Assembly: GCF_006345805.1 (NCBI RefSeq)
Contig: NC_043021.1
Location: 5,766,001-5,830,000 of the forward strand
Length of the DNA: 64,000 nucleotides
From: Octopus sinensis
Lineage: Eukaryota
Direction: 5' to 3'
Position numbers and translations under genes: made by a program. How positions within the stretch are numbered: the stretch's first letter is position 1; each line of letters begins with the position of its first letter. The notes beneath the pieces are model-generated. The model was not told the origin of the DNA. It saw nothing but the letters and a program-made list of their open reading frames with translations, and made no database searches. Of this stretch, positions 1 to 34,057 are shown in pieces.

Positions 1-325
1 ATCTGGCACCTGTGTCAGTGGCACATAAAAACACCATCCGAGCGTGGCCGTCTGCCAGCCTCGTCTGGCACCTGTGTCGGTGGCACATAAAAACACCATC
101 CGAGCGTGGCCGTTCGCCAGCCTCGTCTGGCACCTGTGTCGGTGGCACATAAAATCACCCACTACACTCTCGGAGTGGTTGGCGTTAGGAAGGGCATCCA
201 GCTGTAGAAACACTGCCAGATCTGACTGGCCTGGTGCAGCCTTCGGGCTCCCCAGACCCCAGTTGAACCGTCCAACCCATGCTAGCATGGAAAACGGACG
301 CTAAATGATGATGATGATGATGATG
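1..325 (+). mobile_element. SINE-like family D copy with internal 62-bp tandem array, (ATG)n tail
   Basis: Body gttggcgttaggaagggcatccagctgtagaaa...ggacgctaaatgatgatg recurs more than 12 times in the window. Confidence 0.85.
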
Positions 326-339
326 ATATATATATATCT

Positions 340-1090
340 CCGTGCTGTGGGCACGTAACAAACACCATCCGATCGTGGCCGTTTGCCAGCCTCATCTGGC
401 ACCTGTGTCAGTGGCACATAAAAACACCATCCGAGCGTGGCCGTCTGCCAGCCTCGTCTGGCACCTGTGTCGGTGGCACATAAAAAAACACCATCCGAGC
501 GTGGCCGTTTGCCAGCCTCGTCTGGCATCTGTGTCGGTGGCACATAAAAACACCATCCGAGCGTGGCCGTCTGCCAGCCTCGTCTGGCACCTGTGTCGGT
601 GGCACATAAAAAAACACCATCCGAGCGTGGCCGTTTGCCAGCCTCGTCTGGCACCTGTGTCAGTGGCACATAAAAACACCATCCGAGCGTGGCCGTCTGC
701 CAGCCTCGTCTGGCACCTGTGTCGGTAGTACATAAAAAAACACCATCCGAGCGTGGCCGTTTGCCAGCCTCGTCTGGCACCTGTGTCAGTGGCACATAAA
801 AACACCATCCGAGCGTGGCCGTCTGCCAGCCTCGTCTGGCACCTGTGTCGGTGGCACATAAAAAAACACCATCCGAGCGTGGCCGTTTGCCAGCCTCGTC
901 TGGCACCTGTGTCGGTGGCTCATAAAATCACCCACTACACTCACGGAGTGGTTGGCGTTAGGAAGGGCATCCAGCTGTAGAAACACTGCCAGATCTGACT
1001 GGCCTGGTGCAGCCTTCGGGCTCCCCAGACCCCAGTTGAACCGTCCAACCCATGCTAGCATGGAAAACGGACGCTAAATGATGATGATGA

Positions 1091-1095
<5 letters not shown>
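340..1095 (+). mobile_element. Family D copy with expanded 62/64-bp minisatellite (413-916)
   Basis: Eight alternating units (plus one partial) precede the standard family D body and (ATG)n tail. Confidence 0.88.
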
Positions 1096-1152
<57 letters not shown>

Positions 1153-1237
1153 GTGCAGGAGTGACTGTGTAATAAGAAACTTGCTTCCCAACCACATGGT
1201 TCCAGGTTCAGTCCCACTGCATGGCACCTTGACCTAC

Positions 1238-1330
1238 GGGCATTTCAACTGCATTGACTGCACATTGTTGGATATGCAACATCGTCAGTGCAGTTTCATC
1301 AGGGTCCTTACTCTCTGCCATTTCGTGAAA
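1238..1330 (-). CDS. Candidate internal exon of an unidentified gene (FHEMAESKDPDETALTMLHIQQCAVNAVEMP)
   Basis: Strong acceptor ttattccttcag, donor CCC|GTAGGT, 93 nt open only in phase 0. No family recognised. Confidence 0.35.
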
Positions 1331-1825
1331 CTGAAGGAATAAAAAAATAAATAAATAAAAAAATTTATTAGAATAACAAACTAAGAATATTCCTTTTGAA
1401 ATGAGAGGAACGGTAAACTTGTAGTAGTAATAACAAATCTACATAAACATTCAATCCAACCGTGACCTATTTTTAGGACTATGTTTCTCGCTTCACCTAC
1501 CACATAGAGGTGAACCTCAGTCAAAATTCCCACGACTATTAATAGCAGCACCCACACCTCCTACTAAACACTTCATTCGGGTTTTCTGATTATTGCTTCT
1601 GTTTTGAACACAACATGTGATTCCTCTTACACCCAGCTTTTCACTTAGTACTTTTGTACTATGAAATATATATATGTGTGAAAGGGCATGGATCAGTGGT
1701 TAGAGAGTATTGGGCTCACAGCAAGACCCTTTATTTCGCGTTGCTCCATTTCACTCAGCTGTAGAAATGGGTTGCAATGTCACTGGTGCCAAGCTGTAGC
1801 AGCCTTTTGGAACCAAGTTTCTTAC

Positions 1826-1931
1826 TACACACTGTGTATATGTATGTGTGTGTGTGTGTGTATTTGTGTATGTGTGTGTATGGGTGTATATATGTATGCA
1901 TGTATATATGTGTACATATTACATGTACATC

Positions 1932-2024
<93 letters not shown>

Positions 2025-2251
2025 TATCTACACATACATGTATACATATATATCTACACATACATGTATACATATATCTACACATACATGTATACATATA
2101 CATCTATACATATACATGTATACATATACATCTATACATATACATGTATACATATACAGCTACACATATACATGTATACATATACAGCTACACATATACA
2201 TGTATACATATACATCTATACATATACAGCTATACATATACAGCTATATAT

Positions 2252-2283
<32 letters not shown>

Positions 2284-2340
2284 TTTTATATATATATATA
2301 TATATATATACATCTGCACATATACATGTATACATATACA

Positions 2341-2386
<46 letters not shown>

Positions 2387-2540
2387 TATCTACACATACA
2401 TGTATACATATATATCTACACATACATGTATACATATACATGTATACATATACAGCTACACATATACATGTATACATATACATCTATACATATACAGCTA
2501 TACATATACAGCTATATATATACATACATACATACATATA

Positions 2541-2572
<32 letters not shown>

Positions 2573-2710
2573 CATCTGCACATATACATGTATACATATA
2601 CAGCTATACATATACATATATACATATACATCTATATATATATATATATATATTCATGTATATATATATACATCTATCTATATACATGTATATATATACA
2701 TCTATATGAA
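1826..2710. repeat. Compound (TA)n/(TACA)n microsatellite block
   Basis: Directly visible; gives rise to spurious YI/HI ORFs. Confidence 0.95.
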
Positions 2711-2975
2711 TATAAATAATTTGGGAAAACAAATTTCCAAATCAATCAGGTGTGACCCTACAGTGTTACGTGCATCTGCATATCGTACTTTGGTGTCTAA
2801 TTTATCCTATATTTATATACTTAACTATAAATATGCAAAGTATCTGATATAAGTCAGTATTCAATTTTGAGGGATTAATCGATACGCAGGTATTCTATTT
2901 CAGATAATACAAAAATAACCTGAGTATATCTGACAGTAAACTCATGGTATCAGTTTGCACATCACGAAATAGCAC

Positions 2976-3204
2976 TTAACTCTTTAGTGTTCAAATTAAT
3001 ATGTCAAAAGTAATCCTTATTCATTTTCATTTTTTAAAAATTTATCTGATATTATCTTGTAGCTTCAAGATTTGAAAGATGTAATTGTTTATTTTTAGAA
3101 TGACATTGCAGGGTAGGTGTGAGATACTGGTTCTGGCCAGTTTGAGCATAAAATGAGTAGAATATTTGGGCCGGATATAGCCGGTTTAAACACTAAAGGG
3201 TTAA
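2976..3204. mobile_element. piggyBac-type MITE family 2 (other copies 9553-9786, 32362-32591, 37903-38115, 46085-46312, 47791-48017, 48042-48270)
   Basis: About 230 bp with TTAA CCCTTTAG...CTAAAGGG TTAA termini and no ORF. Confidence 0.8.
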
Positions 3205-3439
3205 AGGATATAACCTAAATTACCAGCTATATAATGTAATTCATTAATTATATCATACTTTAGTTAATACTTATATTTATTAAATATGAAGGAACTATAC
3301 GTGTTTCAGGATTTTTTCGCTGATACTAAAATGGGGATTTGAGGAAAAAAGGAAGATATGTATTTGAATTTTTCTTGTTATATATCAAATTTAAACACAG
3401 ACATTTTTACTCTGATGTTTAATCTTATATCTCACATTC

Positions 3440-5940
3440 TGTATTTCCCGAATCAGTACTCCAGAGTTTCTTCCAGGACAGTGGTCGCTCAAGTGCTTGG
3501 TCCTACTGCATCCATTGACCTTGGTGAGCAAGCCCTACTGCCTTCATCCGGTGAGCCTCTTCCGTTGAACCACACATCCTTTACACTATGGGTTCTCATG
3601 CTCCTGGTATTGGTGTTTTCTACCTCTTGGTACTGTAATTGCCAGTTCCTAGCTGTCCTTGACACACTACACCAACAATCTCATGGTGTTCCGAGTCTGT
3701 CTCTACTTCCTTCATAGTTTCCTGGGGTTTCCATTTTCTGCCACACTTTATGATCTTGTTGGTGTGTCTGACTTCCTCGTCCTCAGACAGAAGCAATGTG
3801 GTGAATGCTCTTGCCTCTGTGGTTTTGAATTCCCCCATCTCTGGTGAAATTAGTAGGCAGAGCTTAGAGGTGTCGCTGTACAGATTGTTCTGAAACTAGT
3901 AGAATGCCGGCCACCTTCACATGCACTTACTGTACAACCTCTCTATTGCCTCTATCCGAATCATGGAAGAGCCATAAAGCAAAAACGGCCACTGCAGTCT
4001 GGGTACGATGCCGTATTGGAAGCACTGCAGTTTGAATCTTCCCAGTAGCTGGCTTTTATCAACTGCCTTTAGCCAGTTGCCTAGTTGAGTTTCAATGTCT
4101 TCAGCATCACCAATATCCTTAAGGGAATGATCGTAATTTTTCCCAGGGCAGCGGACTTTTTCTTGGATTGTCAGAATCTCAGAACTCTGAATGTTGAAGG
4201 TGTCACTTTAACCCTTTCGTTACCAACCCGGCTGAAATCGGCTCTGACTCTGAGTACAAATGTCTTGTTTTCATAAGTTTTAAATTAAAATCTTCCATCA
4301 AACCTTAGTCACAATTTATGTTCCTAACACTAGCTGAATGATAACTAAGTTATTTTACTAAATTCTTTGTTATATTTAAAGTAATTGAAAGAAACACAGA
4401 GTATCTTAACATAAATATGGTAACAAAAGGGTTAAGGATATTCAAGTTTCAAGATTTTACTGGGTTGGACTTCAAGTATGACCATGTGGCCATCTTTTCC
4501 AGTGGGCTTTAATGTCTGCTGTGTCCCTTTGATTGATGGCATCATAACTTTTGTCATCCATGAATGACCTGCAAACTAAATTTCCTGTTTCCATCAGTTT
4601 TGGGACCTCTGGACTACTTCCTTCCTATCTCTACCAGTAGATCCATGGCCACCACAAAGAGTACCATGGAAATAGTGTACCTTGCCATAACGGGTTTTTC
4701 CAATTGCTGCCACTTAGTGGTAAAATTTCCCATAGTAAACCTCATCCTCAGTGGATACATGTGGAACATTATAAGTCTGACTACGTCTGTTGGTACTTGG
4801 TAGTACTCCAATGCACTTTGGAGTAGCTGGTGAGGCATGCTTGAGTACAATTTGGCAAGATCCAATTACACAACAGAGAGTATTGTTCATCCTTGTTTCT
4901 TTAATGACAAGGCCAATCACTTCAAGGCATTCAGAGTGGACTGGGACACTTTCTGAACACTTGTGCCGATGTGCTCATTGGCCAAGAGATATGAGGTTAA
5001 ACTTTGAACAATGATGGTTCAAAAGATCTTCCCCTCAACATCCAGAAGGGAAATCTCTTGAAACTGGTTAAGTTCTGCTGAGTTTTCTTCTTTTAGGGGC
5101 AAAACAACCCTCAGTGAATCAGGATTAGGGGCAAAATAGCCCTCCAGTCCAGGCTTACTGCTTTTTCTTCCAGATTAAACATAAAAGTCTAGCTACTTTA
5201 ACAGAAGCAGACAATTTTTGTATATTCTATACATGGTGCCAGGTGGCCCTGGTGCAGAACCTGCATGATATTTTGCTACCACTGCCCTCACTTTGTTAAA
5301 ACTGATGTCCGTCATGCTGAAGGCAGTGTGGAGTTTCAGTGTTGGCAGTGGATAGGAACAATCCCCTTATAGCATGCCTCTTCTGAGGTCACCATACACT
5401 ACTGCTATTCTGCTTTCCACTTTTCTAGAGCCTATTAACCTCCCACTTTTTGACTCTCTGAAGAGGTCAGCTGTGAACTGGAAGGAGTTGTTAAAAAAAA
5501 GCTTTGTTTTGCTTTCACTTCTCCCTCTCTGTTTTTTCTGAAGTGACTCTGTTCTGCAAAGCTGGAGTAGGTTTCTTCATAACTCCATAGTAAGTTAGTT
5601 TAAAGCACCTTTTCTTTCATCATCCACTTATTTCCAACTTTTCTTCAGCTGCCTTCGTTGTTTGCTTAATCCTACCATCTGATGCAGCCTCTTACTAGGG
5701 CCATTCTGCTTGTTGCTTTTGCTTTTCTTCACTCCAAAGATATCTTGGAATAACTGGTACCACTTGCACCAAGATTCTTATCTTCCTAGTGTGCCGCTCT
5801 TTAAAATATCCAGAATGATGTTCAAGTCCTTGTCCAACTGGGTCCATTTCAGATCTGTTGATAGTGGAAAATTCAGCTGTAGTTTCTTCTCAAAACCCTT
5901 GGGGCTGTCAGATTCATCCACTCCTCTTGCACATTAAGCA
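3440..5940 (-). mobile_element. Degenerate HERO-like (R2/RLE group) non-LTR retrotransposon
   Basis: RT motifs DLAKLYSSMPHQLLQSALEYYQVP..LRMRFT..TTKWQQLE..TISMVLFVVAMDLL and KCGRKWK..HHEIVGVVCQGQLG; many stops and frameshifts. Confidence 0.7.
4208..4435. mobile_element. piggyBac-type MITE family 1 (other copies 17322-17692, 20810-21038, 43313-43534; half copy 17737-17865)
   Basis: TTAA CCCTTTCGTTACC...GGTAACAAAAGGG TTAA termini; this copy is inserted in the HERO-like element. Confidence 0.85.
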
Positions 5941-5989
5941 AGCTAAGCATAGAAGTACTGGGAACCTTGGTTTGCCTCCTGGCAATCTT

Positions 5990-6235
5990 CTGATTGCCAT
6001 GGGGTGTAAGTGACTGAGACAACAACTCCCCTCTCCCAAGTGGGACACTGGGCCATCACAGGGTTCGTTTCCCAGCTATTACTGGGGCTCAGTTACTGCT
6101 GGGTGGACCGGAACAACGTGAAATGAAGTGGTTTGCTCAAGAACACAACACGCTGCCCAGTCCAGGAATCAGAATCGTGATCGTAAGATCACGAAAGCAA
6201 CCCCCTAACCACCAGGTACATGCTTTCACTATGGT
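5990..6235 (-). mobile_element. Degenerate tRNA-headed SINE with V-domain-like segment
   Basis: Reverse complement reads tggtggttaggg..gtgttcttgagcaaaccacttcatttcacg..aaccctgtgatggcccagtgtccc. Confidence 0.5.
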
Positions 6236-7009
6236 TACCACCTCACCATAGTTTACCTAATTTACAAAGCTTGTGATACAAAGACAGGTGCTTCACCATT
6301 GTCTGTCCTTACCTTTCTGTTTTTGCTAAACAAAGAGTGACAGGTGGCTACAGATGCGGTATTGTAGGTTAATTTGTGTATGGGTGTATATATTCACACA
6401 CTCGCTCTTGTTGAACAAAGCTGCTGATAATTCATTTCAGGTCAGGACTGTATATTTAAATGCTGATTATATTTCCTGAACATACAACTTATGATTCATT
6501 GATGTCATTATGAATATAATTATATATACCACCTCTCTCTCTCTCTCTGTCTCACTCCACACACACACACGAACGTTCTTGCACTCATACAAGCATAGGC
6601 GCAGGTGTAGCTGTGTGGTAAGAACCTTACTTCCCAACCACATGGTTCCGGGTTTATAGCAAGTGGAGTGCCTCATGGAACTATCTTGGGGGCTGGTGCT
6701 GCTTATGGGAGCATTTTTGAACATGCCTTCAGTTACACAAACAACCACACTTACTAGCTAAACCAATGACGCAAAAGTAGTACAAACAATCAAGGAACCT
6801 TTTGATGCTAATCTTCTACAGAAAGTCCCAGATGCCATATATGAACAGGCTGAAGAAAACAACATGCAAATTCAATGCAAGAAAATTCCAAGCCGTCTGC
6901 TACCAGCCTGTTTGTGCTGACATGCCACAACAAAGATACTTTGAACTGAAAAGAGCAGCAATCCTAGAGTCAAGTACAGTTCATGATCTGAGGATTGGTA
7001 TCTTTTTCT

Positions 7010-7229
7010 CTTTTACTTGTTTCAGTCATTTGACTGCGGCCATGCTGGAGCACCGCCTTTAATCGAGCAACTCGACCCCGGGACTTATTCTTTTGTAAGC
7101 CCAGTACTTATTCTATCGGTCTCTTTTTGCCGAACCGCTAAGTAACGGGGACATAAACACACCAGCATCGGTTGTCAAGCAATGGTAGGGGGACAAACAC
7201 AGAAACACAAAAACACCCACGCACCCACC

Positions 7230-7278
<49 letters not shown>

Positions 7279-7527
7279 ACAATTGAGGGTAAAATTAATT
7301 AATGTAATATAAGGTAAAATATATATATATATATATATATATACATACATACATATATATGACGGGCTTCTTTCAGTTTCCGTCTACTAAAACCACTCAC
7401 AAGGCTTTGGTTGGCCCGAGGCTATAGTAGAAGACACTTGCCCAAGGTGCCACGCAGTGGGACTGAACCTGGAACCATGTGGTTGGTAAACTAGCTACTT
7501 ACCACACAGCCACTCCTGCACCTATAT
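7010..7527 (-). mobile_element. tRNA-derived SINE family A with central microsatellite (copies also about 23506-24130, 32655-33043, 36343-36728, 37280-37449, 42522-42920, 44085-44400, 47060-47310, 49770-49915)
   Basis: Head ggcgcaggagtggctgtgtggtaag..ggttccgggttcagtccc (A/B-box like), internal (TA/TG)n, tail gactgaaacaagtaaaagag. Confidence 0.88.
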
Positions 7528-7599
7528 GAGAGGTAACACTTCATTTTATGTACATATCACCAAGATTGTGACAGTCTGCTGGTGAATGGCTTGATAGAT

Positions 7600-8195
7600 T
7601 CTGAGAACTTTCAGAATCAAGGAATCAGAATCAACTATGCTAGTTCTATAGATAACATTTGCCTTCGGCTGTTTGAACTCTTGCTCTCAACTGTGGCCTC
7701 ACCACAATATCAAATTAACAATGCAACTTGAAGCAGTTCAGTGGTGCTACACCAGGAAGATTGCATCAGTGGAACAGTTGAGCTATTGGGAGAGACGGAA
7801 AGAGTTTTAATTCTACTCCCTGGAGCAAAGACAGGAGAGATATGCCATGCTATACATATGGGATATCCTAGAGGGGTTGGCACCAAACTTTGGCATAGAA
7901 TGTTATACCAGCCTCCAAACTGGAAGTCACTACACTGTTCCAAAACTCTCACCCATTCTGTTTAGAGTGAGGCCCATGTACTGCAATAGCTTGGGATTCA
8001 AAGACCCACAGCTATTTAATATCTTGCCAAAACAACTGAGGGAGCTGCATGAAGTAGGGGTGGATGTTTTCAAGAAAAAACTTGACCTCCTGCTGTCTAT
8101 GATCCCAGATGAACCTACATCACAGCAAGAAACTCAAAACAGGGCAGCAGAGGCAAACTTCTTCCTTCACCAAAAGCCAGTCACAAAAGAGTGGC
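7600..8195 (+). mobile_element. CR1-group LINE 3' fragment
   Basis: YIWDILEGLAPNFGI..CNSLGFKDPQLFNILPKQLR..FKKKLDLLLSMIPDEP; the upstream part is frameshifted. Confidence 0.75.
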
Positions 8196-10194
8196 CATTT
8201 GAAAAGGGGATAATATTGTTGTGCCACAGTATGGCCACAGCCTTTGATGAGCTGAAACACATAAAAGAATACACACACACACGTACACACATACAAGTGT
8301 ACGTATGCTGATTAAAATAATTTGCTAAACTTTTTAAAGTTGTGACATGGGAAAGTTTCCAGCAACACCTTCTGCATGTAATCCATAGAGTTAAGCTGCT
8401 GCAAGTATACTTAAATATAGTGAACCAAAAATCTCTCAATTTCTCTCTCTCTCTCTCTTTCTCTCTTGTTTGAAATTATCGTTGGTAAATATATTGATAA
8501 TGTTCTGTTTGCTGTGATTAATATCAGTTTGTTTGGAGGGATATTGTAGATTTAGGTTAGAATAGTGTTGTGTGGGGGGAAAGTGCGATATAGTTAAAAA
8601 TAGAGGTGAAAAAGTATGGTGGGAGAGAAGGAGAGTGTGAGTGGAGATTGGCAAAAAGAGCAGAGTAATGGTGAGATTGTAGTCTGAGTGTAAGGAAGTA
8701 GTTAGTATGAGTGTGAGTGTGTGTGTGTGAGAGAGAGAGTAATAGAAATGAGAGGTCTAAGTGAAATCTATATGAGTAAGAGAGAGAAAATAAAACAGAA
8801 AGAAAGAAGAGGGGGTGAGTATGCATGTTGGTCTCAGAGAGAGAGAGAGATGTGTGAAAGTGTGTATTTGTGAAGGAATAAAATGTGTGTGTGTGTGAGT
8901 GAGCGTGCAAATGCAAGAGAGGGTTAACAAATTGCTTGGTTTTTCTAACTAAATATTTCTGCAGAGAAAGAAAGAGAGCAACAGCAACATTAATTGTGAC
9001 AATAACTGCAATGCAAACAAGCAGATCCACCCAAAACGATAAAAACAAAACTGATATCCTCTGAGAGGTGAAGAAAGTTTGAAGAGACCTCAAAGCTGAA
9101 GACGTGTGAATTAGGTGGATTTCAGCCATTGACCTGTTTTATAAACAATATCATATAAAAAAACATTGTATGTATTACAATTGTTGTAGTAGTCAAGGTA
9201 TTGACAGTGGGGACAGCCACAGTGGCGTGTAAAAGCATGTGTGTGTGTCTGTGTGTTTGTAGTCACATTAACAGTTTTTTTTCTTTTTGTTTTTCCTTTC
9301 TGGGTTTGGAGAGAAAGAGAGAGAGACAGTGCCATTGGATACTGTGGGCATTCTGAGCCTGGTGATATTATTGAGGCTGTTAATGTTCGGCTTAACCTAT
9401 TTCTGTACTACCCACAAGGGCTAAACGCAGAGAGGACAAACAAGGACAGACAAACGGATTAAGTCGATTATATCGACCCCAGTGCGTAACTGGTACTTAT
9501 TTAATCGACCCCGAAAGGATGAAAGGCAAAGTCGACCTCGGCGGAATTCTGCTTAACCCTTTGGCATTCAAATTCTTCTGTAAAATGCATTGCTTATTTA
9601 TTGACATTGTTTCAAATTAATCATGCATTATCTTATAGCTTTGAGATTTCAACGATGTGATTGATTGTGTATTTTTAGAATGATAAATGATAGGGTAGGT
9701 GTGAGAGGCGAGATTTAGGTGGTTTGGACACAAAACAGGTTGAAGATTTGGGCTGGATGTGGTTGGTTTAAATGCCAGAGAGTCAAACTATTGCATGTTG
9801 ATGACTGCAGTAAAAAATATGGAGCTGGTGATGAGTGATTTCAGAAGACGATTGTTCTTGGGAGAATAATCTTTGGTGATTGTTTTTGTGCAGGGACTAG
9901 TGAGGCTGGAAACAGCTTGTATGAGGTAAAAGGAAAAATGAGTGAGTTGACAGAGCAACTCTGAAGAAAGGGCCCTCAAGAATGCCAGACAACTGATCTA
10001 ATTGGTTGCAGTAGAGCAAACTCCATTGAATGGCCAGGTGATGGTATAAAACCAGGCAATATGATATATCTGTGATCCCCAAAAACGAGGTGGTAGGGAC
10101 CTTTATGGTTAGGTAGTCTGTAGGAACTAGGAGCAAGGGGCAGGGGGTAACATTGTTAATAAGTGGAGAACCCAAAACATAGCAATTTCATCAC

Positions 10195-11110
10195 TCAGTT
10201 CCCATGAGGAGGGAAAATTTTTCAAAAACCTCATATCACCAAAGATCCTGATCCTTTGTCATCTCATCCATCAGGCAGAGAGTCCTGAGTTCAGCCTTCA
10301 CCACTCCACCCCATACTTTCCTGAGTCTCCCTCTTCTGCAAGCTTTAAGTGAAAACGACACTTCTTTATATAGCTGTCCTCATCCTTCTACATCACATGT
10401 CCATACCAGTGCCAGCTACTTTCTTGAACACATCTGATTCCTCTTATACCCAGTTTTTTCCCTCGGCACCTTTGTACCAATTCTTTCACACACATCCACA
10501 TTGCACATCCAGTGAAGCATGCTTGTGGCATTTCTTTCTAATCTTCTCAAGTCCTCTGCATTCAAGGCCCATGTCTCACTACCATACAGAAGTACACTTC
10601 TAATACAAGCATCATACAATCTGAACTTTTCTCAATCAGGTCTTTAATCTAATGACTATACTCTTAGAGCAACAAACCTCCCCTACTAATTGCATCTTCT
10701 AATTATCAACTTCTTCTAATGAGCCGTCTAGGCATTTAAGAGAGCTGGTTTCAGGTGTGCTTGTACGTTCTACTCCAGTGCATTTATCAAATATGAAGCT
10801 TATATTTTTGGATAGTCTGCCAGTGATTCCACTACATCTCTTGTGTGTCCGTAGTTTACATTGACTTTAGTTTACGGAATTTATACATACTTCTTTTCTA
10901 CAAGAGCAATGCCATTTCCCTAAAAGTACCAGAGTCCTGTTTTCTCTCCTATTTACTAAAACCTTTGTCCATGCATCTACTTTAAAAGTCTTCTATTCTA
11001 GGAATAGCTTCCATGCTGAGATTTCCTTCTGTAATTCCCCTATAGAATTCAATTATAAGGACTAGATCATCAGTCTTAAATTCCACTTCATGGACAACCA
11101 GTCTTAAACT
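10195..11110 (-). mobile_element. RTE-clade LINE 3' fragment
   Basis: YDACIRSVLLYGSETWALNAEDLRRLERN plus an upstream Cys-rich GKW.C..C segment; stops present. Confidence 0.8.
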
Positions 11111-11431
11111 CCACTTCAAGTTTTTTTAATAATAATTCTTGTTTAACACATGCATCTTTTCTCAGGATAAGTTATGATTTCAGATCAATAACTTGAAGTT
11201 TCATAACTTTATTGTTGACTGAACATTTAAATACAAACTGACCTTTTGGTTGGCAGCTGTGTTGACAATTCTTTTCAGTATGACATTGCTTAACTGTCAT
11301 GGACCTGTGTAAAATATGCATAGTTTGTTGTTTGGAATATTTGTTTTGTGTTGCAGTGTCATACTTGAAATCAATACTCTGTCTTCTACTAGTATGACTT
11401 GTGTCCAGTCAGTTGTGATGCCATCTGGAAA

Positions 11432-12185
11432 TATGAGATGCATTCCAGAAGTTTTGATACTTTTTTTTCAAGACAGTGAGTTATAAGATGTCTAAGATTA
11501 TTGTCATTTTAGTATATCATTACTGCACATCCAGTAATTTGACCTACCAACTTTAGTTATTCTAGACTGAAGGAGACGACTGTAACAGCACTTTTATCAT
11601 ATCCTGCAAAAAAACACTGCTTGCCACTGCCGACTAGCTTGCAGAAAGCAGTTGGGATATTTGGAAGGTTGCAATGTAATAAAGTTTTGTGTTAAACTGG
11701 GCAAAAATGCCACAGAAATTTATGAAATGTTCGACACTGCTTATGGATTAACTTTTTTGCTGGCATAAGCAGTCCAAGGATGGTTGAGAAGTGTGGGAGA
11801 GAGAGGGGTGTCAGAACATCAATGCTGGTTGAGAAAATTCACAATTTTCTGGTTGAAGACCATCTTATGTCTATAAAGACAATAAGCATATAGTTTGGGT
11901 TTGGTGTGACAACTGTACATAGAATTGTTTATGACGATTTGAACAGGTGTAAAGTTTGTTCCCAGGTTGACAAAGATGGGTATCAAAACTGTCCCTCACC
12001 CCCTCCTTACAGTCCAGACCTTGCTCCCTTTGACTTTTGGCTGTTCCCCAAGCTGTAGGAGAACCTCGAGAGCAGTTGTTTTGAAGATGAAAGAGGCTGT
12101 GACAAGAGTCCTGGACACCTTTACTTTAGAGGACTTTAACTTCCATGGCGCTTTCATGAAGTAACCGGAATACTACAATTTGTGG
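11432..12185 (+). mobile_element. Degenerate mariner transposon
   Basis: FCVKLGKNATEIYEM N-terminus and HPPYSPDLAPFDFWLFPKL motif; TIR-like TATGAGATGCATTCCAGAAGTTTTG at the left end. Confidence 0.8.
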
Positions 12186-12269
12186 TGCTGACATAAAAAA
12201 ATGTATTTCACAAAGTCTTAACTCTAGTGACCTACTGAATAAACCTGTCTGTGTTGCAACAGATGTTGA

Positions 12270-12830
12270 ATATATTGCAAGATCTGATGTTTTTACTGAT
12301 ATAATGAATCATCTACAAACTCTTAACTTGGCACTCCAGAGAAAGGCTAAGATTATTTCTAATCTTACTCAGTTTTCAGCTTTCAAAGTAAAATTAAAAC
12401 TTTTCTAAGAGACATTGTTGAAAAATTTCAGGCACTTTGCCAATCTCAGAAATGGAGTGAATCCATTTCCTGATGCTAAAATAAAAGACCACAAACCGGA
12501 ATACCAGCATAAATTACAAAGATTACAAAGATTACTTGATAATTTCCTAACCAGGTTTGATGACTTGCACAAGGTGAAGCAGGACTTTCTTGATGTGATC
12601 AATGATGGTTGTCCAATTCTCAAACCTCTAGTTATGGAATCACGAGGCAATGGATTTACAGAATTTAGGTCTAAAGAAGATCCGTAGATCCTTGTCTACA
12701 AAAGAGTTCTGGAAACAAGTTCCAGAAATAGAATGTCCTAAACTGAAGAAAACAACTGTGCAACCACTCTGTAATGAATTTTATGAAATGGAAGCATTGT
12801 GCAGACCTTACAAGCCACCAACTTATTGAG
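12270..12830 (+). mobile_element. hAT (SPIN/GTF2IRD2-like) transposase C-terminal fragment
   Basis: DLMFFTDIMNHLQTLNLALQ..FSAFKVKLKLF..NFRHFANL; frameshifted. Confidence 0.65.
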
Positions 12831-13185
12831 CCAATTCATATAGCCTTGATGGAAACCTGAAAGACCTCTGCTAGCAATAAATAGCAGCTTTAATAGCCGG
12901 ATATGTGTTGCATTGTCATAAAAATTTGCAAGTCTCCTTTTATAAGATAGGATCTGGTTTAAATAACTCTAATTTTATTGGTTTGCCTTTTTACATATTT
13001 TTCATGTTCCGACTAGATATTTACTAAGATAAATATTTTAATTATTTTTACCTTTTCTCTTTTATTCTTGATTGTCTAATTTCATGTTACTGAATGCCAA
13101 TTTGTACAACCTATGCATAAGTACACTTGAACATATGTGTGTATGTGTGTATGTCTATGTGCGGATGTTCGTTTCAATTTCACAG

Positions 13186-13330
13186 ACTAAATTCACCTGC
13201 ATTCCGCATCTGCTGTCTCTTGCTCACCCCCACCTCCAACTCTGTTGATTTAGCTTTCTTTTCCCCGGAGACACAAGGTGCCATAAATTATCTTTACAAC
13301 TGCCACACTTCCGAACTTCAAATTATAAAG
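13186..13330 (+). CDS. Probable preceding exon of the Yellow-like gene (LNSPAFRICCLLLTPTSNSVDLAFFSPETQGAINYLYNCHTSELQIIK)
   Basis: Acceptor tttcaatttcacag, donor AAG|GTAATT, open frame. LYNCHTSELQ fits the Yellow LY.V.TS.LR pattern. Phase 0 joins the 16325 acceptor. Confidence 0.45.
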
Positions 13331-14858
13331 GTAATTTATGTACCCCACCCTCAATGTTTTTGTAGTTCATTATTGTATTAAATATGCTAAAACTTTTGGT
13401 GTACAAACTTAAACTAAATCAACTGCATTCATGAATAAATATTATTGCATACATGCAAAATGTGTTTGTAGCAATTAAAAAACATTCTTTTGTGTCACGA
13501 GTTACGCTCATCAGACTACAGCCAGCCTGGGGCACCATCATGGAAGTATTTAATCAATCATATCAACCCTAGTACTTTTTTTTAAAGTTTGGCATACTTC
13601 TATTATTGATCCAAGTTGTGTGGGACAGAAACACTGACACAGATACAAATGTAAACATGGTGTGAATATTGTTCATGTCATGCAACTCTCAAACACCTGA
13701 ACTTTATAGTCTTGTTAATCAAGTTTCACCAACTTTGGATTAAATGTTTCAAGTAGATTTTGGCATTTCATCTCAGGGGAAGTTGAAAGGTTACCTGCAA
13801 TTTGGATCTCAGCCATAAACCAGCATGTTTTGGAATATTTACACTTGCATCCCCGCAATAAATTTTCAGAATTTACCATATAAAAATGACATTCGAAAAA
13901 ATTGCCTTTCTTTTGCAGTTCAGTGTATAACTTGTAAACAAGATCACTACCTAATTATGACACCAGTGTCTGTCCTGGCACTGTTTTTTTCTCTATATTG
14001 CTAGCAGGGAGATGAGTTGCTGCTATCTCTAGTGGTCAAGTGTCCATCACTGATGAGAAGGTTGAAATCATGTGATCTGGTGGTCTCGGTGCTGGAGGTG
14101 GCAGGGATTTATCTCCCCGCTAGCGATATAAACAAGAGTGCATCATTCTCCAAAAGCCAATATGAGAAGTTCTCTCATGATATCTACCACAGTATAGTTT
14201 GTTCTAACAGAACATCCACATTTAAGTGGGCATAAATATTGCCTCTCGGTATTAATACTGCCTCTGTCACTTACGTATATTTTTCATGACATGGGAGAGG
14301 AGGACCATATGACATGCTGCAGCTAAACTGGAAAGGAAACTGCAAGGCTGCAGAGCTGAAAAAACCCAGAGATCCAACTAGAGAAAAGCAGAAAAAACAG
14401 CCCAGGGTTGAAAGCAGTGGAAAAAAGTTGTTGATGGCTTCTGCTTCATAGGGAGTGAAAGCTTTAAGTGATATGAATGAAAGGAAAGAGCTTAGCCTGT
14501 GACACCCATCTGATGGGTTTTTCTCTTGAAACCAGAGACTTGGCCCAAATACTTGTAACAAAGTGAATTCTGCTAAAGGCATCTAAGTGTCAGGTGGTAC
14601 TGTTAATCTGAACACATTATTACAATACAACAAAAACTCTTGCACTTTTGTAGCACTGGTAGTTGCTAATTCATTTTCTGTTCATGTTTCATTAAATCAA
14701 CATTATCTACCTCATGCTTACTAATAAATACTTCATTGCTATCTCATATTCCTTCACACATGCTTATTACTTATTTCACCTTGCTCGTTACCTCTTCATC
14801 GTCAGTTCATGTTACTAATTCTACATAATTTTCTCTTGTTGCTAATTGTTTCTCTGTG

Positions 14859-15230
14859 TGTGGAGGCGCAATGGCCCAGTGGTTAGGGCAGCAGACTCGC
14901 GGTTTCGATTCCCAGACCGGGCATTGTGAGTGTTTATTGAGCGAAAACACCTAAAGCTTCACAAGGCTCATGCAGGGGGTGGTGGTGAACCCTGCTGTAC
15001 TCTTTCACCACAACTTTCTCTCACTCTTACTTCCTGTTTCTGTTGTACCTGTATTTCAAAGGGCCAGCCTTGTCACACTCTGTGTCACGCTGAATCTCCT
15101 CGAGAACTACGTTAAGGGTACACGTGTCTGTGGAATGCTCAGCCACTTGCACGTTAATTCCACGAGCAAGCTGTTCCGTTGATCGTATCAGCTGGGACCC
15201 TCATCGTCGTAACCGATGGAGTGCTCCTAT
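14859..15230 (+). mobile_element. tRNA-derived SINE family B (copies 25733-26112, 48555-48940, 62547-62927; variant tails 24513-24794 and 58920-59212)
   Basis: Head tggaggcgcaatggcccagtggttagggcagc..gtttcgattccc; this copy is flanked by a ttctctgtgt direct repeat. Confidence 0.88.
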
Positions 15231-15373
15231 ATTCTCTGTGTATTGTTAATCACTCCCTCATTATCTCATGTTACTAATTGTTTTCACTTTGTTATTTTAT
15301 GTTGGTAATTACCTCCCAAATGATATTTCACATTGCCAATTACTTCCCTTATTTTTAATACTCATGCTGACCA

Positions 15374-16165
15374 TTGCCTCTTTTGCGGATTCTATGGACA
15401 GCAAGGCTCACCAATGGAGAAGTCCTTAAGCAGATCAGGCTGAAAATGTTGCTAGAAGCTGGGATCACCAAGCTTAGATTGGCATTTTTCGGTCATATTA
15501 TGCGGAGAGAATTCCTGGAGAAGGACATCATGCTCGGAATGGTCAGTGGCAAGAGAGGAAGAGGCCGACCAAGAACCCGCTGGCTTGACACCATCAGGAG
15601 TGATACCGAAATGGACATGGCCAGTCTGAAAGAAGTGGCCCAGGATTGAACTGACTGGAGGACACTGATCCAACGAGTGACCGAGAGTCGACTTCGACTG
15701 AGTGGATAGATAGATAGATATATATTATATATACGGAATGGTCAGTGGCAAGAGAGGAAGAGGCCAACCAAGAACCCGCTGGCTTGACACCATCAGGAGT
15801 GGTGGACATGCCCACAAAGTCAGAAAACAACACAGCTCCCATGATTTTCGGAAACATTTCTTCACACTCAGAGTTGCTGAAGCATGGAATAAACTGCCTG
15901 CGTCAGTTGTTGACTGCCATGACACTGCATCCTTTAAGGCCCTCATACTTTCCGAAATCCGTCAAAACTACACCTGATTATATATACACTTTCGATGAGT
16001 TGTAGTGCACCTGAGCACTGTACACAATGTTTTATTATTATTATTATTATTATACCGGAATGGACATGGCCAATCTGAAAGAAGCAGCCCAGGATAGAAC
16101 TGACTGGAGGACACTGATCCATCGAATGACCGAGAGTCGACTATGACTGAGCGGATAGAGAGAGA
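15374..16165 (+). mobile_element. Two tandem RTE 3' ends, the second split by a CR1 3' fragment (15802-16051)
   Basis: FFGHIMRR..GMVSGKRGRGRPRTRWLDTI occurs twice; CR1 HFFTLRVAEAWNKLP with (TTA)n tail; RTE resumes at 16052. Confidence 0.82.
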
Positions 16166-16324
16166 TTTTTAATACATCATAATTTTTTTCGTTGTCGATT
16201 CATGTTGCTAAGTTATTGCTAATCTCGTCCCATGTTGCTAAGTTATTGCTAATCTCGTCCCATGTTGCTAAGTTATTGCTAATCTCATTACCTTCTCTCC
16301 TTCTTTTCTCATTGCAGCTTACAG

Positions 16325-16762
16325 AAAATTCGTACTATTGGAACGAAATTGGCAAAAGGATTTGGCATGTTGATGGGGTGGAGGTACATGTACCTGACAG
16401 GTGTCGAGGATAAAGTGGTGTATGTTTGGGACCGCAACGCTGACCTGGAGAAGCAGAAAGGTATCGTCAAATATGCTGGCCTCGTTACCATGGAAACACA
16501 GAAAGAACTGAAAGTTAGCCCCGAGCTCTCCTTGCACCCGGGAAAGATGTCCTTTGACAATCACGGGAACCTGTGGATCATAACTACGGATTACCAGTTG
16601 TACTTCAGAAATTCCACGGAGGGCGAAGGCTACGAGACAAAAATTGTGAAACTAAAAGTCGATGACTCAAGGGAAAAGCGAACCACTTCGACAGCAGCTT
16701 TGGACCGGAAGCTCCTTATATTGTTAATAATTGCCACGGTTATGTTGTGCATTGTTTTGTAG
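16325..16762 (+). CDS. Yellow/major royal jelly protein (MRJP) family protein, terminal exon
   Basis: Open frame KIRTIGTKLAKGFGMLMG..YVWD..TMETQKEL..MSFDNHGNLWIIT..LYF follows the C-terminal propeller blades of Yellow proteins. It is preceded by a strong pyrimidine tract and AG (16317 or 16324), ends in TAG, and has AATAAA at 16814-16819. Confidence 0.75.
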   Translation, partial: KIRTIGTKLAKGFGMLMGWRYMYLTGVEDKVVYVWDRNADLEKQKGIVKYAGLVTMETQKELKVSPELSLHPGKMSFDNHGNLWIITTDYQLYFRNSTEGEGYETKIVKLKVDDSREKRTTSTAALDRKLLILLIIATVMLCIVL

Positions 16763-17384
16763 GAATTTGACAAAAAGAGTTATGTTATGACTATTAGAAG
16801 AAGGATGCAAAAGAATAAAGTAGAAAGAGGAGAGAGAATGTGAGTGTGTGTATTTTATTATTTTTCAGTGTCTGCTGTTATAGTTGTTGTTGTTGCCTTG
16901 TTTCCAACAAGAGGAGTTTCAGGTAATACAAGTGATCCTAGTTTTAAGCATAAATTCATGTACATACTTTATCACCACCACCTCCACCACCACCATCATC
17001 ATCAATTTACGTTTGCTTTTTGCCTACTGGCTTGAATCAGATTGTTCTATTCCAGTAAAAATTCTTGTCACTCCTGAACATCCTTTGTCATCAGATTCAC
17101 AACAACAACGCCGGAATATTGCTTATCTTTATTGTGCTAGCATCGATTAGTTCAGCAGTTCTCAAATTGAACAAATACCAAGCTACCTCCAGCAAAAAAA
17201 AAGGAAAAAGAAGCATAGTTCTTTTAGCATCTGTCCCTTCTTTATGGATGAAGACAAAACAGAGCTTGCACTGTATAAATTTTCTTCTTTGATTACCATA
17301 GTTTGGACAAGTTTACAAAGTTTAACCCTTTCATTACCGTATTTGTTTTGAGATGTTCTGTGTTTCTTTCAATTACTTTAAATA

Positions 17385-23400: not shown

Positions 23401-24129
23401 AATGACAGCAAACAATCGTCAGTTCTCTACCAACATGCCACATAGCATTATTATCATTATTATTATTATTATTATGGCTAATTTCTAATCAGGACTACAG
23501 CAACATAGGCGCAGGAGTGGCTGTGTGGTAAGTAGCTTGCTAATCAACCACATGGTTCCGGGTTCAGTCCCACTGCGTGGCATCTTGGGCAAATGTCTTC
23601 TGCTATAGCCCCGGGCCGACCAATGCCTTGTGAGTGGATTTGGTTGATGGAAACTGAAAGAAGCCTGTCTATACATGTATATATATATATGTATGTATGT
23701 GTGTGTTTGTGTGTCTGTGTTTGTCCCCCTAGCATTGCTTGACAACCGATGCTGGTGTGTTTACGTCCCCTTCACTTAGCGGTTCAGCAAAAAGAGACCG
23801 ATAGAATAAGTACAGGGCTTCCAAAGAATAAGTCCCGGGGTCGATTTGCTCGACTAAAGGTGGTGCTCCAGCATGGCCACAGTCAGATTACTGAAACAAG
23901 TAAAAGAGTATGTGTGTGTTTGTGTGTCTGTGTTTGTCCCCCTAGCATTGCTTGACAACCGATGCTGGTGTGTTTACGTCCCCTTCACTTAGCGGTTCGG
24001 CAAAAAGAGACCGATAGAATAAGTACTGGGCTTCCAAAGAATAAGTCCCGGGGTCGATTTGCTCGACTAAAGGCGGTGCTCCAGCATGGCCGCAGTCAGA
24101 TGACTGAAACAAGTAAAAGAGTAAAAAGA

Positions 24130-24360: not shown

Positions 24361-26249
24361 CTATGCTGCTGTCTTCTCAGATCAGGCAAGGAAGAGAAGC
24401 GTACTGAATCGAATTAGTATCAAAATTTGTCTTAACACCCTTGAGACTCATCATTATGACAGCTACCTGAGTCTGTTCTCTAAAATCAGACAATTCCAAT
24501 ACTAACTAAAACGTCACCGTGACTGACCAGGCTATCAGATGTTGCTACACATCGCTGATCACAATGCGCTTCACATTGTTTTAGCCTTCAAATGACGCCA
24601 CCCTGCTGGCTAAGCGAGCAGGCCAACAGAAGAAAGAGTGAGAGGAAGTTGTGGCAAAAGAGTACAGCAGGGATCGCCACGACCCCCTGCCGGAGCCTCG
24701 CTCAATAGACACTCACAACACCCGGTCTGGGAATCGAAACTGCGATCCTCCGACCGCGAGTCCGCTGCCCTAACCACAGGGCCATTGCGCCTCCACAACT
24801 AAAACGTATGCATAGTAAATATAATACCAGAACCACAATACCACTTGCACTACCTGCATAACACATGCAGAAGTATGTGGACGTGCTATAGACACGTATG
24901 TATAGGGTGAGAGCTGGCAGAAACGTTAGCACGTTGGGCGAAATGTGTAGCCATATTTCGTTTGCCGTTACGTTCTGAGTTCAAATTCCGCCAAGGTCAA
25001 CTTTGCCTTTCATTCTTTCGGGGTCGATTAAATAAGTACCAGTTACGCACTGGGGTCGATGTAATCACTTAATCCGTTTGTCTGTCCTTGTTTGTCCCCT
25101 CTGTGTGTAGCCCCTTGTGAATAGTAAAGAAATAAGTATTTTGTCTGTCTTTATGTTCTGAGTTCAAATTCCGCCGAGGTTGACTTTGCCTTTCATTCTT
25201 TCGGGATCGATTAAATAAGTACCAGTTACGCACTGGGGTCGATATAATCGACTTAATCCATTTGTCCCCTCTGTGTTTAGCCCCTTGTGGGTAGTAAAGA
25301 AATAGGTATGTGTAGGGTAATATTAGAATGACAGCAAGATAATCAGCAATCCACAAAGAGAAATACTTGTAATTATAAACAATTCCAGTATGCAACCATA
25401 CACATTCACGAACACACAAGCCCACATAAAAACATATACACACAAGAACACAACTATACACACATCGGCATGAATACCCACACAGACATACACTAGCACA
25501 CACACACACACATGCAAACATACACACAGACTTATATGTTTGAAAGAAAACTTCTTTTGTTATTTTAAAATTGTCAGCAGTGTTTATGATCTGAAAATTG
25601 CTATTACACAATCCATTTGTCAACGAAACAAATGTTTATACCTGAACATATACTTTTCATTTAATTTCTTTTTTTTTGTGTGTATGTATGTATGAGCATA
25701 TATTTGTTTTCAAATGTGTGTGTAATTTTAGGAAGCACTCCGTCGGTTACGACGATGAGGGTTCCGGTTGATCCGATCAACGGAACAGCCTGCTCGTGAA
25801 ATTAACGTGTAAGTGGCTGAGCACTCCACAGACACGTGTACCCTTAACGTAGTTCTCGGGGATATTCAGCGTGACACAGAGAGTGAAAAGGCCGGCCCTT
25901 TGAAATACAGGTACAACAGAAACAGGAAGTAAGAGTGAGAGAAAGTTGTGGTGAAAGAGTACAGCAGGGATCACCACCATCCCCTGCTGGAGTCTCGTGG
26001 AGCTTTAGGTGTTTTCACTCAATAAACACTCACAACGCCCGGTCTGGGAATCGAAACCGCGATCCTACGACCGCGAGTCCGCTGCCCTAACCGCTGGGCC
26101 ATTGCGCCTCCACGTGTGTGTAATAAAAGCATATGTAACAATGTATGAAATTTTTGTAAGTGTAATAATACACACACACATACATATATATATATACATA
26201 TAAGAGAACAAGGTGTATGTTACGCTGCAATAATTTATGTCTAAAAAAT

Positions 26250-33937: not shown

Positions 33938-34057
33938 CAGAATATGTAGTTCAATAATCAGTCATGTGCCACTGCTCTGTGCCATCACTGTCACTGCACC
34001 ATGCTGAAAACAATGTCGCATGAGGATCCACCACCGCTGTGCTCTGCTGTGACGATG

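What the first reader, a model, noticed from the sequence alone, without database searches (positions are those of the whole stretch)
13186..16762. Cephalopod Yellow/MRJP-family gene: candidate for the ink dopachrome-rearranging enzyme
Seen: exons encoding Yellow-type propeller motifs. Established: some insect Yellow proteins (Drosophila yellow-f/f2, mosquito DCE) convert dopachrome to 5,6-dihydroxyindole, and cuttlefish (Sepia) ink contains a dopachrome-rearranging activity with the same product. I do not know whether the gene for that activity has been identified. Inference: a Yellow-like protein is a natural candidate for cephalopod melanin chemistry. Many Yellow paralogs are non-catalytic, so this is a hypothesis only. 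The 5' exons were not found in the window.
Basis: partly seen in the sequence, partly recalled or inferred. Interest (0 to 1): 0.78.

Follow-up and report, generated by a model that had tools for sequence, protein, structure and literature searches.

The report
Last exon of octopus Yellow-like gene

Summary
The window is Octopus sinensis chromosome CM016883.1; bases 1-21762 match it at 100%. Window 16318-16762 (+) is the second and last coding exon of LOC115224275 (XP_029650946.1, 407 aa, "uncharacterized protein"). It encodes residues 260-407.

The exon alone scores below the Pfam MRJP threshold (13.9 bits against 19.8). The whole protein passes (45 bits). An AlphaFold model of the near-identical O. 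vulgaris ortholog matches only MRJP1, Aedes dopachrome conversion enzyme, LJM11 and 2QE8 at the top of the list. Family membership is therefore confirmed.

It has no homology to any Yellow protein, it is absent from three species' gene models, and its frame does not fit the conserved acceptor. The only 5' coding exon lies 2.8 kb upstream of window base 1, across a 19.1 kb intron.

The gene family in cephalopods is already published (Rosani et al. 2019, O. bimaculoides ortholog; expressed in skin, suckers and viscera). The ink-enzyme idea remains untested. The protein is absent from a published O. vulgaris ink proteome, and its putative pocket residues are poorly conserved.

One feature that paper's text does not discuss is a C-terminal tail that looks like a GPI-attachment signal. 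Interest is low to moderate.

The parts
16318..16762 (+). Terminal (second) coding exon of LOC115224275, the octopus Yellow/MRJP-like gene. The first base C completes the split codon CG|C for Arg260. Codons 261-407 follow, and the stop TAG is at 16760-16762.
   Evidence: Identical to XP_029650946.1 residues 261-407. tblastn against the Argonauta ortholog gives E 5e-53. The mollusc Yellow HMM gives E 3.7e-43. Against O. vulgaris there are 7 nucleotide differences, of which 2 are nonsynonymous.
1..16317 (+). The 3' 16.3 kb of the single 19.1 kb phase-2 intron of the gene. It is full of satellite, SINE/LINE and transposase remnants. Coding exon 1 (residues 1-259 plus 2 nt) ends 2,797 nt upstream of window base 1.
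   Evidence: Window 1-21762 equals L003 8579-30340 at 100%. Exon 1 maps to L003 5001-5782 and exon 2 to 24896-25340. No exon-1 homology exists anywhere in the window, on either strand.
16290..16317 (+). Polypyrimidine tract and AG acceptor (…ccttctctccttcttttctcattgcAG|C).
   Evidence: Same junction in O. vulgaris. Argonauta has the same intron position and phase (AG|T = Ser).
13186..13330 (+). It is an intronic open frame with chance AG/GT flanks and is NOT part of the coding sequence.
   Evidence: No similarity to any Yellow homolog or to the HMM. It is absent from the two-exon models of O. sinensis, O. vulgaris and Argonauta. It is phase-incompatible with the conserved acceptor. It has no counterpart in the Argonauta intron.
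16535..16594 (+). Stretch from His333 (CAC, 16535-16537) to Tyr352 (TAC, 16592-16594). It contains the motif HPGKMSFDNHGNLWIITTDY.
   Evidence: Read directly from the sequence. The residue numbers match Table 2 of Rosani et al. 2019, where these are the only two LJM11 pocket positions kept aromatic in the O. bimaculoides protein. The stretch aligns to 'YPNDLSIDQEGNVWFMSN' of Aedes DCE 9W1K.
16682..16759 (+). C-terminal tail, residues 382-407: TTSTAALDRK followed by LLILLIIATVMLCIVL. It looks like a GPI-attachment signal or a terminal membrane anchor.
   Evidence: Read directly from the sequence. AlphaFold predicts helix 385-406 after a low-confidence linker. Equivalent hydrophobic C-termini occur in mollusc homologs P0001, P0002, P0005 and P0014. 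The GPI reading is inference; no predictor was run.
16814..16819 (+). AATAAA, 52 nt after the stop codon; a possible polyadenylation signal.
   Evidence: Sequence only; not tested.

Best explanation
Window 16318-16762 (+) is the second and last coding exon of Octopus sinensis LOC115224275 (XP_029650946.1, 407 aa). This is the octopod member of the Yellow/MRJP family (a single gene in O. bimaculoides, per Rosani et al. 2019). It is the ortholog of the O. bimaculoides 'DCE/yellow' gene that they described.

Shown:
- The exon encodes residues 260-407.
- In the model this is about the last two blades of a six-bladed beta-propeller, then a Ser/Thr-rich linker, then a 16-residue hydrophobic C-terminus.
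- Exon 1 lies 2.8 kb upstream of the window, across a 19.1 kb phase-2 intron. In the model it encodes a hydrophobic N-terminal leader and roughly blades 1-4.

Inferred working model:
- The protein enters the secretory pathway.
- It is held on the outer or lumenal membrane face by a GPI anchor or a terminal helix.
- It uses the central propeller pocket to bind or rearrange a small catechol- or indole-quinone-type molecule.

The ortholog is reported as expressed in skin, suckers and viscera. The protein was not detected in octopus ink, and its pocket residues are diverged. I therefore think its main role is epidermal or general rather than in the ink gland.

My probabilities:
- About 0.3 that it has dopachrome-converting activity at all.
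- About 0.12 that it is the ink enzyme.
- About 0.45 that it is a non-catalytic binding or structural Yellow.
For: Identity of the locus:
- The window matches CM016883.1 at 100%, and the exon translation is identical to XP_029650946.1.
- The CDS has two exons in O. sinensis, O. vulgaris and Argonauta, with the same intron position and phase.
- The downstream GLTP gene is syntenic.

Family membership:
- Pfam MRJP scores are 45.0 bits for O. sinensis, 48.2 for O. vulgaris, and 55.8 for both O. bimaculoides and Argonauta. The cut-off is 19.8.
- The profile of mollusc homologs hits MRJP1 at 5.6e-37, Aedes DCE at 3.1e-29 and LJM11 at 2.9e-18.
- The AF2 model has pLDDT 80 and pTM 0.81.
- The ten best Foldseek matches are all MRJP1, Aedes DCE 9W1K, 2QE8 or LJM11, at TM 0.61-0.74. 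The next matches are generic propellers at TM about 0.45.

Selection:
- Against O. vulgaris, 2 of 7 exon differences are nonsynonymous.
- Against Argonauta, dN is 0.24 with dS saturated.

Tail: the hydrophobic C-terminus is conserved across mollusc homologs.

Expression and earlier description: PMC6678240.

Absence from ink: neither the accessions A0A6P7TPR5 and A0A0L8H478 nor the LOC names occur in the supplements of PMC10142993. Those supplements include an uncut protein table.
Against: - No expression, localisation or activity data for O. sinensis were available here.
- The window exon alone is below the Pfam threshold and gives no direct PDB sequence hit. Family assignment therefore rests on the full-length protein, most of which lies outside the window.
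- The GPI reading is by eye only.
- Absence from an ink proteome is weak evidence for a membrane- or melanin-bound protein.
- The O. bimaculoides tissue set, as far as I recall, had no separate ink-gland sample.
Confidence: 0.85

Rival explanations
1. This Yellow-like protein is the dopachrome-rearranging enzyme of cephalopod ink: it converts L-dopachrome to 5,6-dihydroxyindole in ink-gland melanosomes.
For: - It has the same fold and family as Aedes aegypti DCE.
- The Sepia ink enzyme yields DHI, as insect DCEs do, and is melanosome-associated (Derby 2014). A lipid-anchored lumenal protein could fit that.
- O. bimaculoides has only one Yellow gene. If the ink enzyme is a Yellow, it should be this ortholog.
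- In the literature searched here, no gene has been assigned to the Sepia activity.
Against: - It is not listed in the O. vulgaris ink proteome, although the search database contained it. A tyrosinase-domain protein and a peroxidase were abundant there.
- The ortholog is reported as expressed in skin, suckers and viscera.
- Only 2 of 7 LJM11 pocket positions are retained, and structure-aligned identity to Aedes DCE is about 17%.
- The review states that the substrate preferences of the Sepia enzyme and the insect enzymes differ.
- From my memory of Palumbo et al. 1994, the Sepia enzyme ran at about 85 kDa, co-purified with tyrosinase and was inhibited by tropolone and mimosine. That suits a tyrosinase-related protein better than a roughly 41 kDa Yellow. 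The paper is not held, so this is unverified.
Confidence: 0.12
2. It is a genuine dopachrome- or aminochrome-converting enzyme that works outside the ink gland, for example in wound or immune melanisation, or in tanning of the skin and sucker lining.
For: - Family and fold match.
- The ortholog is expressed above 100 TPM in skin and suckers.
- It has a secretory-type architecture.
Against: - Pocket residues are diverged.
- To my knowledge, most Yellow paralogs have no demonstrated catalytic activity.
- To my knowledge, octopus skin chromatophore pigments are ommochromes, not melanin. Skin expression therefore does not imply melanin chemistry.
Confidence: 0.2
3. 13186-13330 is a real exon, either alternative or species-specific, of this gene.
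For: It is an open frame of 48 codons with an AG acceptor and a GT donor. It is identical in O. vulgaris.
Against: - No homology.
- Not in any of the three gene models.
- Wrong phase for the conserved acceptor.
- The identity to O. vulgaris is not exceptional: 25% of windows in this intron are identical.
- It is not conserved in Argonauta.
Confidence: 0.03
4. The exon is a decaying fragment of a pseudogene.
For: Only one exon is present in the window, and its intron is heavily invaded by repeats.
Against: - The frame is intact and identical to the RefSeq product.
- Exon 1 is intact just upstream.
- Substitutions against O. vulgaris are synonymous-biased.
- The ortholog is expressed in O. bimaculoides.
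Confidence: 0.01

Closest known systems
Octopus bimaculoides DCE/yellow (LOC106872886, XP_052832718.1), described by Rosani et al. 2019, Genes 10:495
   Same: Orthologous gene of 407 aa. The numbering matches (His333 and Tyr352 both fall in this exon). Same MRJP domain and the same C-terminal tail apart from one residue.
   Different: Different species. The old O. bimaculoides model (260 aa, named 'Adipocyte plasma membrane-associated protein') lacked exactly this exon.
Aedes aegypti dopachrome conversion enzyme (PDB 9W1K/9W2C) and Drosophila yellow-f/f2
   Same: Six-bladed MRJP/Yellow propeller (Foldseek E about 1e-17, TM 0.69; profile E 3e-29). The D-x-x-G-N-(L/V)-W motif of the last blade is shared.
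   Different: - Structure-aligned identity is only about 17%.
- To my knowledge the insect enzymes are soluble secreted proteins; the octopus protein ends in a hydrophobic, GPI-signal-like tail.
- Activity is untested.
Apis mellifera MRJP1 (5YYL, 7ASD) and the sandfly salivary Yellow-related protein LJM11 (3Q6K)
   Same: Best and near-best structural and profile matches.
   Different: These are non-enzymatic: nutritional/oligomeric and biogenic-amine-binding respectively. Only 2 of 7 LJM11 pocket residues are retained.
Sepia officinalis ink dopachrome-rearranging enzyme (Palumbo et al. 1994)
   Same: It forms DHI, as the insect Yellow-type enzymes do, and it is associated with melanosomes.
   Different: It is known only as an activity. 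No sequence was available to compare. The reported properties that I recall (about 85 kDa, co-purification with tyrosinase) do not obviously fit this protein.

Membership tests
Yellow/MRJP (Pfam PF03022) | Significant match to the MRJP profile above the gathering score (19.8 bits). | tested here: met
   The full gene product XP_029650946.1 scores 45.0 bits across profile positions 31-283 of 288. Orthologs score 48.2 to 55.8 bits. The window-encoded part alone scores 13.9 bits, E 0.035, below the cut-off, but it aligns to the correct profile positions 199-284.
Yellow/MRJP (Pfam PF03022) | Six-bladed beta-propeller fold closest to solved family members. | tested here: met
   AF2 model of the O. 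vulgaris ortholog (98.6% identical in this exon): pLDDT 80, pTM 0.81. Foldseek ranks 1-10 are all MRJP1, Aedes DCE, 2QE8 or LJM11. A clear gap separates them from other propellers.
Yellow/MRJP (Pfam PF03022) | N-terminal secretion signal. | not tested
   Exon 1, outside the window, starts MQIYWNILVFFATSTVSVLG. This is hydrophobic and signal-like by eye; no predictor was run.
Dopachrome conversion enzyme (EC 4.1.1.84-type Yellow-f/f2, Aedes DCE) | Catalyses dopachrome to 5,6-dihydroxyindole. | not testable with these tools
   No activity data exist. No published catalytic residues for 9W1K were found in the paper library, so a residue-level test was not possible.
Dopachrome conversion enzyme (EC 4.1.1.84-type Yellow-f/f2, Aedes DCE) | Conservation of pocket-lining residues shared by insect Yellow proteins. 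| tested here: inconclusive
   This is taken from the literature rather than tested here. Rosani et al. Table 2 keeps only His333 and Tyr352 of 7 LJM11 pocket positions. Both codons are confirmed in the window.
Cephalopod ink dopachrome-rearranging enzyme | Present in ink, ink gland or melanosomes. | tested here: not met
   The accessions and LOC names of this protein and its O. bimaculoides ortholog are absent from the supplements of the O. vulgaris ink proteome (PMC10142993). These include the uncut protein table, and the search database contained these proteomes. This is a literature look-up and therefore weak negative evidence.
GPI-anchored proteins | C-terminal signal: a small omega-site residue, a short polar spacer, then 15-20 hydrophobic residues running to the C-terminus. 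| tested here: inconclusive
   …TTS-TAALDRK-LLILLIIATVMLCIVL fits the pattern by eye. A helix is predicted at 385-406. No GPI predictor or experiment was available.

The most novel reading that the evidence does not exclude
The single octopod Yellow gene encodes a lipid-anchored, melanosome-lumen dopachrome decarboxylase/tautomerase. It would be the long-unassigned DHI-forming 'dopachrome-rearranging enzyme' of cephalopod ink. Ink proteomics would have missed it because it stays bound to melanin granules.
Probability: 0.1. Interest if true: 0.65.

Novelty: already known. Interest (0 to 1): 0.25.

Why it matters
If this Yellow protein were shown to make DHI in the ink gland, it would assign a gene to an enzyme activity known since 1994. 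It would also show that insects and cephalopods use the same non-tyrosinase enzyme family for eumelanin. As things stand, the locus is an annotated gene whose family membership and possible melanin role were published in 2019.

This check adds four things:
- A corrected gene model for the window: one real exon, not two.
- The exact location of the missing exon.
- Independent confirmation of the fold against the new Aedes DCE structure.
- The observation of a GPI-signal-like tail shared by mollusc Yellow proteins.

Tried and rejected
2. The search for homologous proteins with the exon peptide: no hit. Yet identical or near-identical proteins are in that collection. This was a miss of the word filter, not true absence.
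3. phmmer of the partial peptide and of the full-length ortholog against PDB sequences: no meaningful hits. Only the profile of mollusc homologs reached the solved Yellow structures.
5. Search for exon 1 or other Yellow exons anywhere in the window, on both strands, by tblastn, phmmer and HMM: none found. Weak collinear hits near 28 kb on the minus strand are low-complexity (TA/CA)-type translations.
6. My by-eye match of 13186-13330 to the family's 'LAMSPDF..YLY' blade motif: rejected after the HMM test and the gene-model comparison.
7. Conservation of 13186-13330 against O. vulgaris as evidence for an exon: uninformative.
8. Palumbo et al. 1994 (PMC1138097): not held.
9. No paper found for the Aedes DCE crystal structure or its catalytic residues.
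10. No literature hit for LOC115224275.
11. No ink-sac transcriptome reporting Yellow was found.
Full report
**What is at the coordinates.**
- The first is 13186-13330. It has AG and GT flanks and 48 codons.
- The second is 16318-16762. It follows a polypyrimidine tract and an AG, and it ends in TAG.
- Between them lie a tRNA-like SINE head, fragments of LINE ORF2 C-termini and a 30-bp tandem repeat.

Pfam on the joined peptide gives MRJP at only 13.6 bits (E 0.043). The last exon alone gives 13.9 bits (E 0.035). Both are below the 19.8-bit gathering score, though the match falls on the expected C-terminal profile positions 199-284 of 288. A word-indexed homology search and a PDB sequence search found nothing useful.

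**Homologs and gene structure.**
- An exhaustive HMMER search of 1.84 billion representatives found a 407-aa protein, P0001. It is 59% identical over its residues 250-407 (E 5e-50).
- P0001 is from Argonauta hians, carries a proper MRJP domain (55.8 bits), and is encoded by just two coding exons separated by a 12.4 kb intron.
- tblastn of P0001 against the window hits only 16316-16759 (E 5e-53).
- A further search recovered the orthologs from O. vulgaris (CAI9740646.1), O. bimaculoides (XP_052832718.1, plus an older 260-aa exon-1-only model named 'Adipocyte plasma membrane-associated protein') and O. sinensis (XP_029650946.1, LOC115224275). The full-length ones are all 407 aa.
- The window translation is identical to the O. 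sinensis protein from residue 261 to 407. It differs from O. vulgaris at two residues.

**Where the window comes from.**
- Window 1-21762 equals CM016883.1 (GCA_006345805.1, O. sinensis) at 100%.
- In that record, exon 1 (residues 1-259 plus two bases, CG) ends 2,797 nt before window base 1.
- The intron is 19.1 kb, and exon 2 starts at window 16318. That base C completes CGC = Arg260.
- O. vulgaris has the same junction. Argonauta has the same intron position and phase.
- The glycolipid-transfer-protein gene lies downstream on the minus strand in both Octopus and Argonauta, so the locus is syntenic.

**The first 'exon' is not an exon.**
- A mollusc Yellow HMM run over every stop-free segment of the window, with filters off and E up to 100, hits exon 2 at 3.7e-43 and does not list the 13121-13378 frame at all.
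- The segment lies inside the single intron of the O. sinensis and O. vulgaris gene models. The Argonauta model likewise has only two coding exons.
- It ends in phase 0, whereas the conserved acceptor needs two bases carried over from the upstream exon.
- It has no counterpart in the Argonauta intron.
- Its perfect identity to O. vulgaris is unremarkable, because 25% of 145-nt windows in this intron are also identical.
- My own by-eye alignment to a blade motif did not survive these tests.

**Family membership.**
- The full O. sinensis product scores 45.0 bits on Pfam MRJP. The O. vulgaris product scores 48.2 and the O. bimaculoides product 55.8.
- A profile of nine mollusc homologs hits MRJP1 at 5.6e-37, Aedes aegypti dopachrome conversion enzyme (9W1K) at 3.1e-29, LJM11 at 2.9e-18 and 2QE8 at 5e-6.
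- An AlphaFold model of the O. vulgaris ortholog has pLDDT 80 and pTM 0.81.
- Its ten best Foldseek matches are exclusively those four proteins, at TM 0.61-0.74. After them comes a drop to generic propellers at TM about 0.45.
- By the strand pattern of the model, exon 2 supplies roughly blades 5 and 6, a disordered linker, and a terminal helix at residues 385-406.

**Protein features read from the window.**
- His333 and Tyr352 are both encoded here (16535-16537 and 16592-16594). According to Rosani et al. they are the only two LJM11 pocket positions kept aromatic in the octopus protein.
- There is one N-x-T sequon (NST).
- The tail TTSTAALDRK + LLILLIIATVMLCIVL runs to the very C-terminus, which is the layout of a GPI-attachment signal.
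- Comparable hydrophobic ends occur in other mollusc homologs.
- To my knowledge, insect Yellow proteins are soluble. The text of the 2019 paper does not discuss a tail.
- The GPI reading is an inference; no predictor was available.

**Selection.** Against O. vulgaris the exon has 7 substitutions, of which 2 are nonsynonymous. Against Argonauta, dN is 0.24 with synonymous sites saturated. This is consistent with a functional gene.

**What is already known.**
- Rosani et al. 2019 (PMC6678240) surveyed DCT and DCE/yellow genes across Metazoa. They found one DCE/yellow and one DCT gene in O. bimaculoides and rebuilt the full transcript, because the annotation was incomplete.
- They modelled the protein on LJM11 and noted poor conservation of pocket residues.
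- They reported expression above 100 TPM in skin, suckers and visceral mass, with DCT almost restricted to retina. They suggested a melanogenic role.
- The idea that a cephalopod Yellow protein may act in melanin chemistry is therefore already published.
- The Sepia ink dopachrome-rearranging enzyme is described in reviews as melanosome-associated and DHI-forming, with substrate preferences different from the insect enzymes. No gene is named for it.

**Bearing on the ink hypothesis.**
- The O. vulgaris ink proteome (PMC10142993) searched databases containing this protein, both O. vulgaris/sinensis LOC1152xxxxx entries and O. bimaculoides entries.
- Its supplements, including the uncut protein table, contain none of A0A6P7TPR5, A0A0L8H478, LOC115224275 or LOC106872886.
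- They do list a tyrosinase-domain protein among the more abundant entries, and a peroxidase.
- This is weak negative evidence, because a membrane- or melanin-bound protein could be lost during preparation.
- From memory only, since the paper is not held: the Sepia enzyme ran at about 85 kDa, co-purified with tyrosinase, and was inhibited by tropolone and mimosine. That fits a 41-kDa Yellow polypeptide poorly.
- Also from my own knowledge: octopus skin colour comes from ommochromes, so skin expression does not itself argue for melanin chemistry.

**Verdict.**
- The family call is right.
- The functional proposal is not new and currently has no positive support.
- I put about 0.12 on this being the ink enzyme. 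I put about 0.3 on any dopachrome-converting activity.
- I favour a membrane-tethered Yellow protein of epidermal or general function, whose ligand or substrate is still unknown.

Noticed in passing
window 34043-34165, 38180-38356, 40797-40922 (- strand): Exons of a glycolipid transfer protein (GLTP) gene. One scores 48.5 bits on Pfam GLTP. They are collinear with the GLTP gene downstream of the Argonauta Yellow ortholog, so the neighbourhood is conserved across octopods.
   Followed up: partly
window 15374-15710, 15738-16040, 16050-16160 (+): Inside the Yellow intron there are two partial copies of a LINE ORF2 C-terminus (…GKRGRGRPRTRWLDTIRSD…MDMASLKEVAQD.TDWRTLIQRVTESRL). The second copy is split by the 3' end of a different retroelement (…FFTLRVAEAWNKLPASVV…) and an (ATT)n run, which looks like a nested insertion. 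Pfam recognises none of these pieces.
   Followed up: partly
window 14858-14935 (+): tRNA-like sequence (GGCGCAATGGCCCAGTGGTTAGGGCAGCAGACTCGCGGTTTCGATTCCCAGACCGGGC), presumably a SINE head. ARAGORN calls no tRNA anywhere in the window.
   Followed up: partly
window 7361-7456, 23558-23669, 32880-32992, 37289-37394, 42572-42684, 44073-44159, 47148-47260: A dispersed repeat of about 110 bp, present in at least seven copies. It is shared with the Argonauta locus at 82-88% identity. Such conservation across octopod families is unusually high for an interspersed repeat.
   Followed up: no
window 2-932, with related copies near 26.4-27.3, 28.5-29.1, 31.8-32.2, 33.4-33.9 and 39.7-40.1 kb: A 63/126-bp satellite (AAACACCATCCGAGCGTGGCCG…) in a 9-copy array at the window start, with scattered solo copies. 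Related sequence occurs in O. vulgaris and in Argonauta. It produces long spurious ORFs on both strands.
   Followed up: no
window 16201-16286 (+): A perfect 30-bp tandem repeat, 2.9 copies (CATGTTGCTAAGTTATTGCTAATCTCGTCC), ending just before the polypyrimidine tract of the Yellow exon-2 acceptor.
   Followed up: no
window 30933-31256 (+) and about 11.3-11.9 kb (+): Remnants of a mariner/Tc1-like transposase: DDE_3 at 27.8 bits, a weak HTH_48 hit, and a '…PPYSPDLAPFDFWLFPKL' motif.
   Followed up: partly
L004 9959-10381 (ENA ERZ21867824, contig ctg81199l): A 30-kb contig from an assembly filed as a metagenome carries a spliced exon-2 homolog of this gene. It is 34% identical, has an AG acceptor at about the same place (residue 265 against 260), and has the same hydrophobic tail. 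It is evidently host (probably mollusc) DNA. It shares no repeats with Octopus.
   Followed up: partly
one search compared: The word-indexed protein search returned nothing for the 147-aa exon peptide. Yet a 100% identical protein (XP_029650946.1) and a 98.6% identical one are in that collection. A negative from that tool should not be read as absence.
   Followed up: yes
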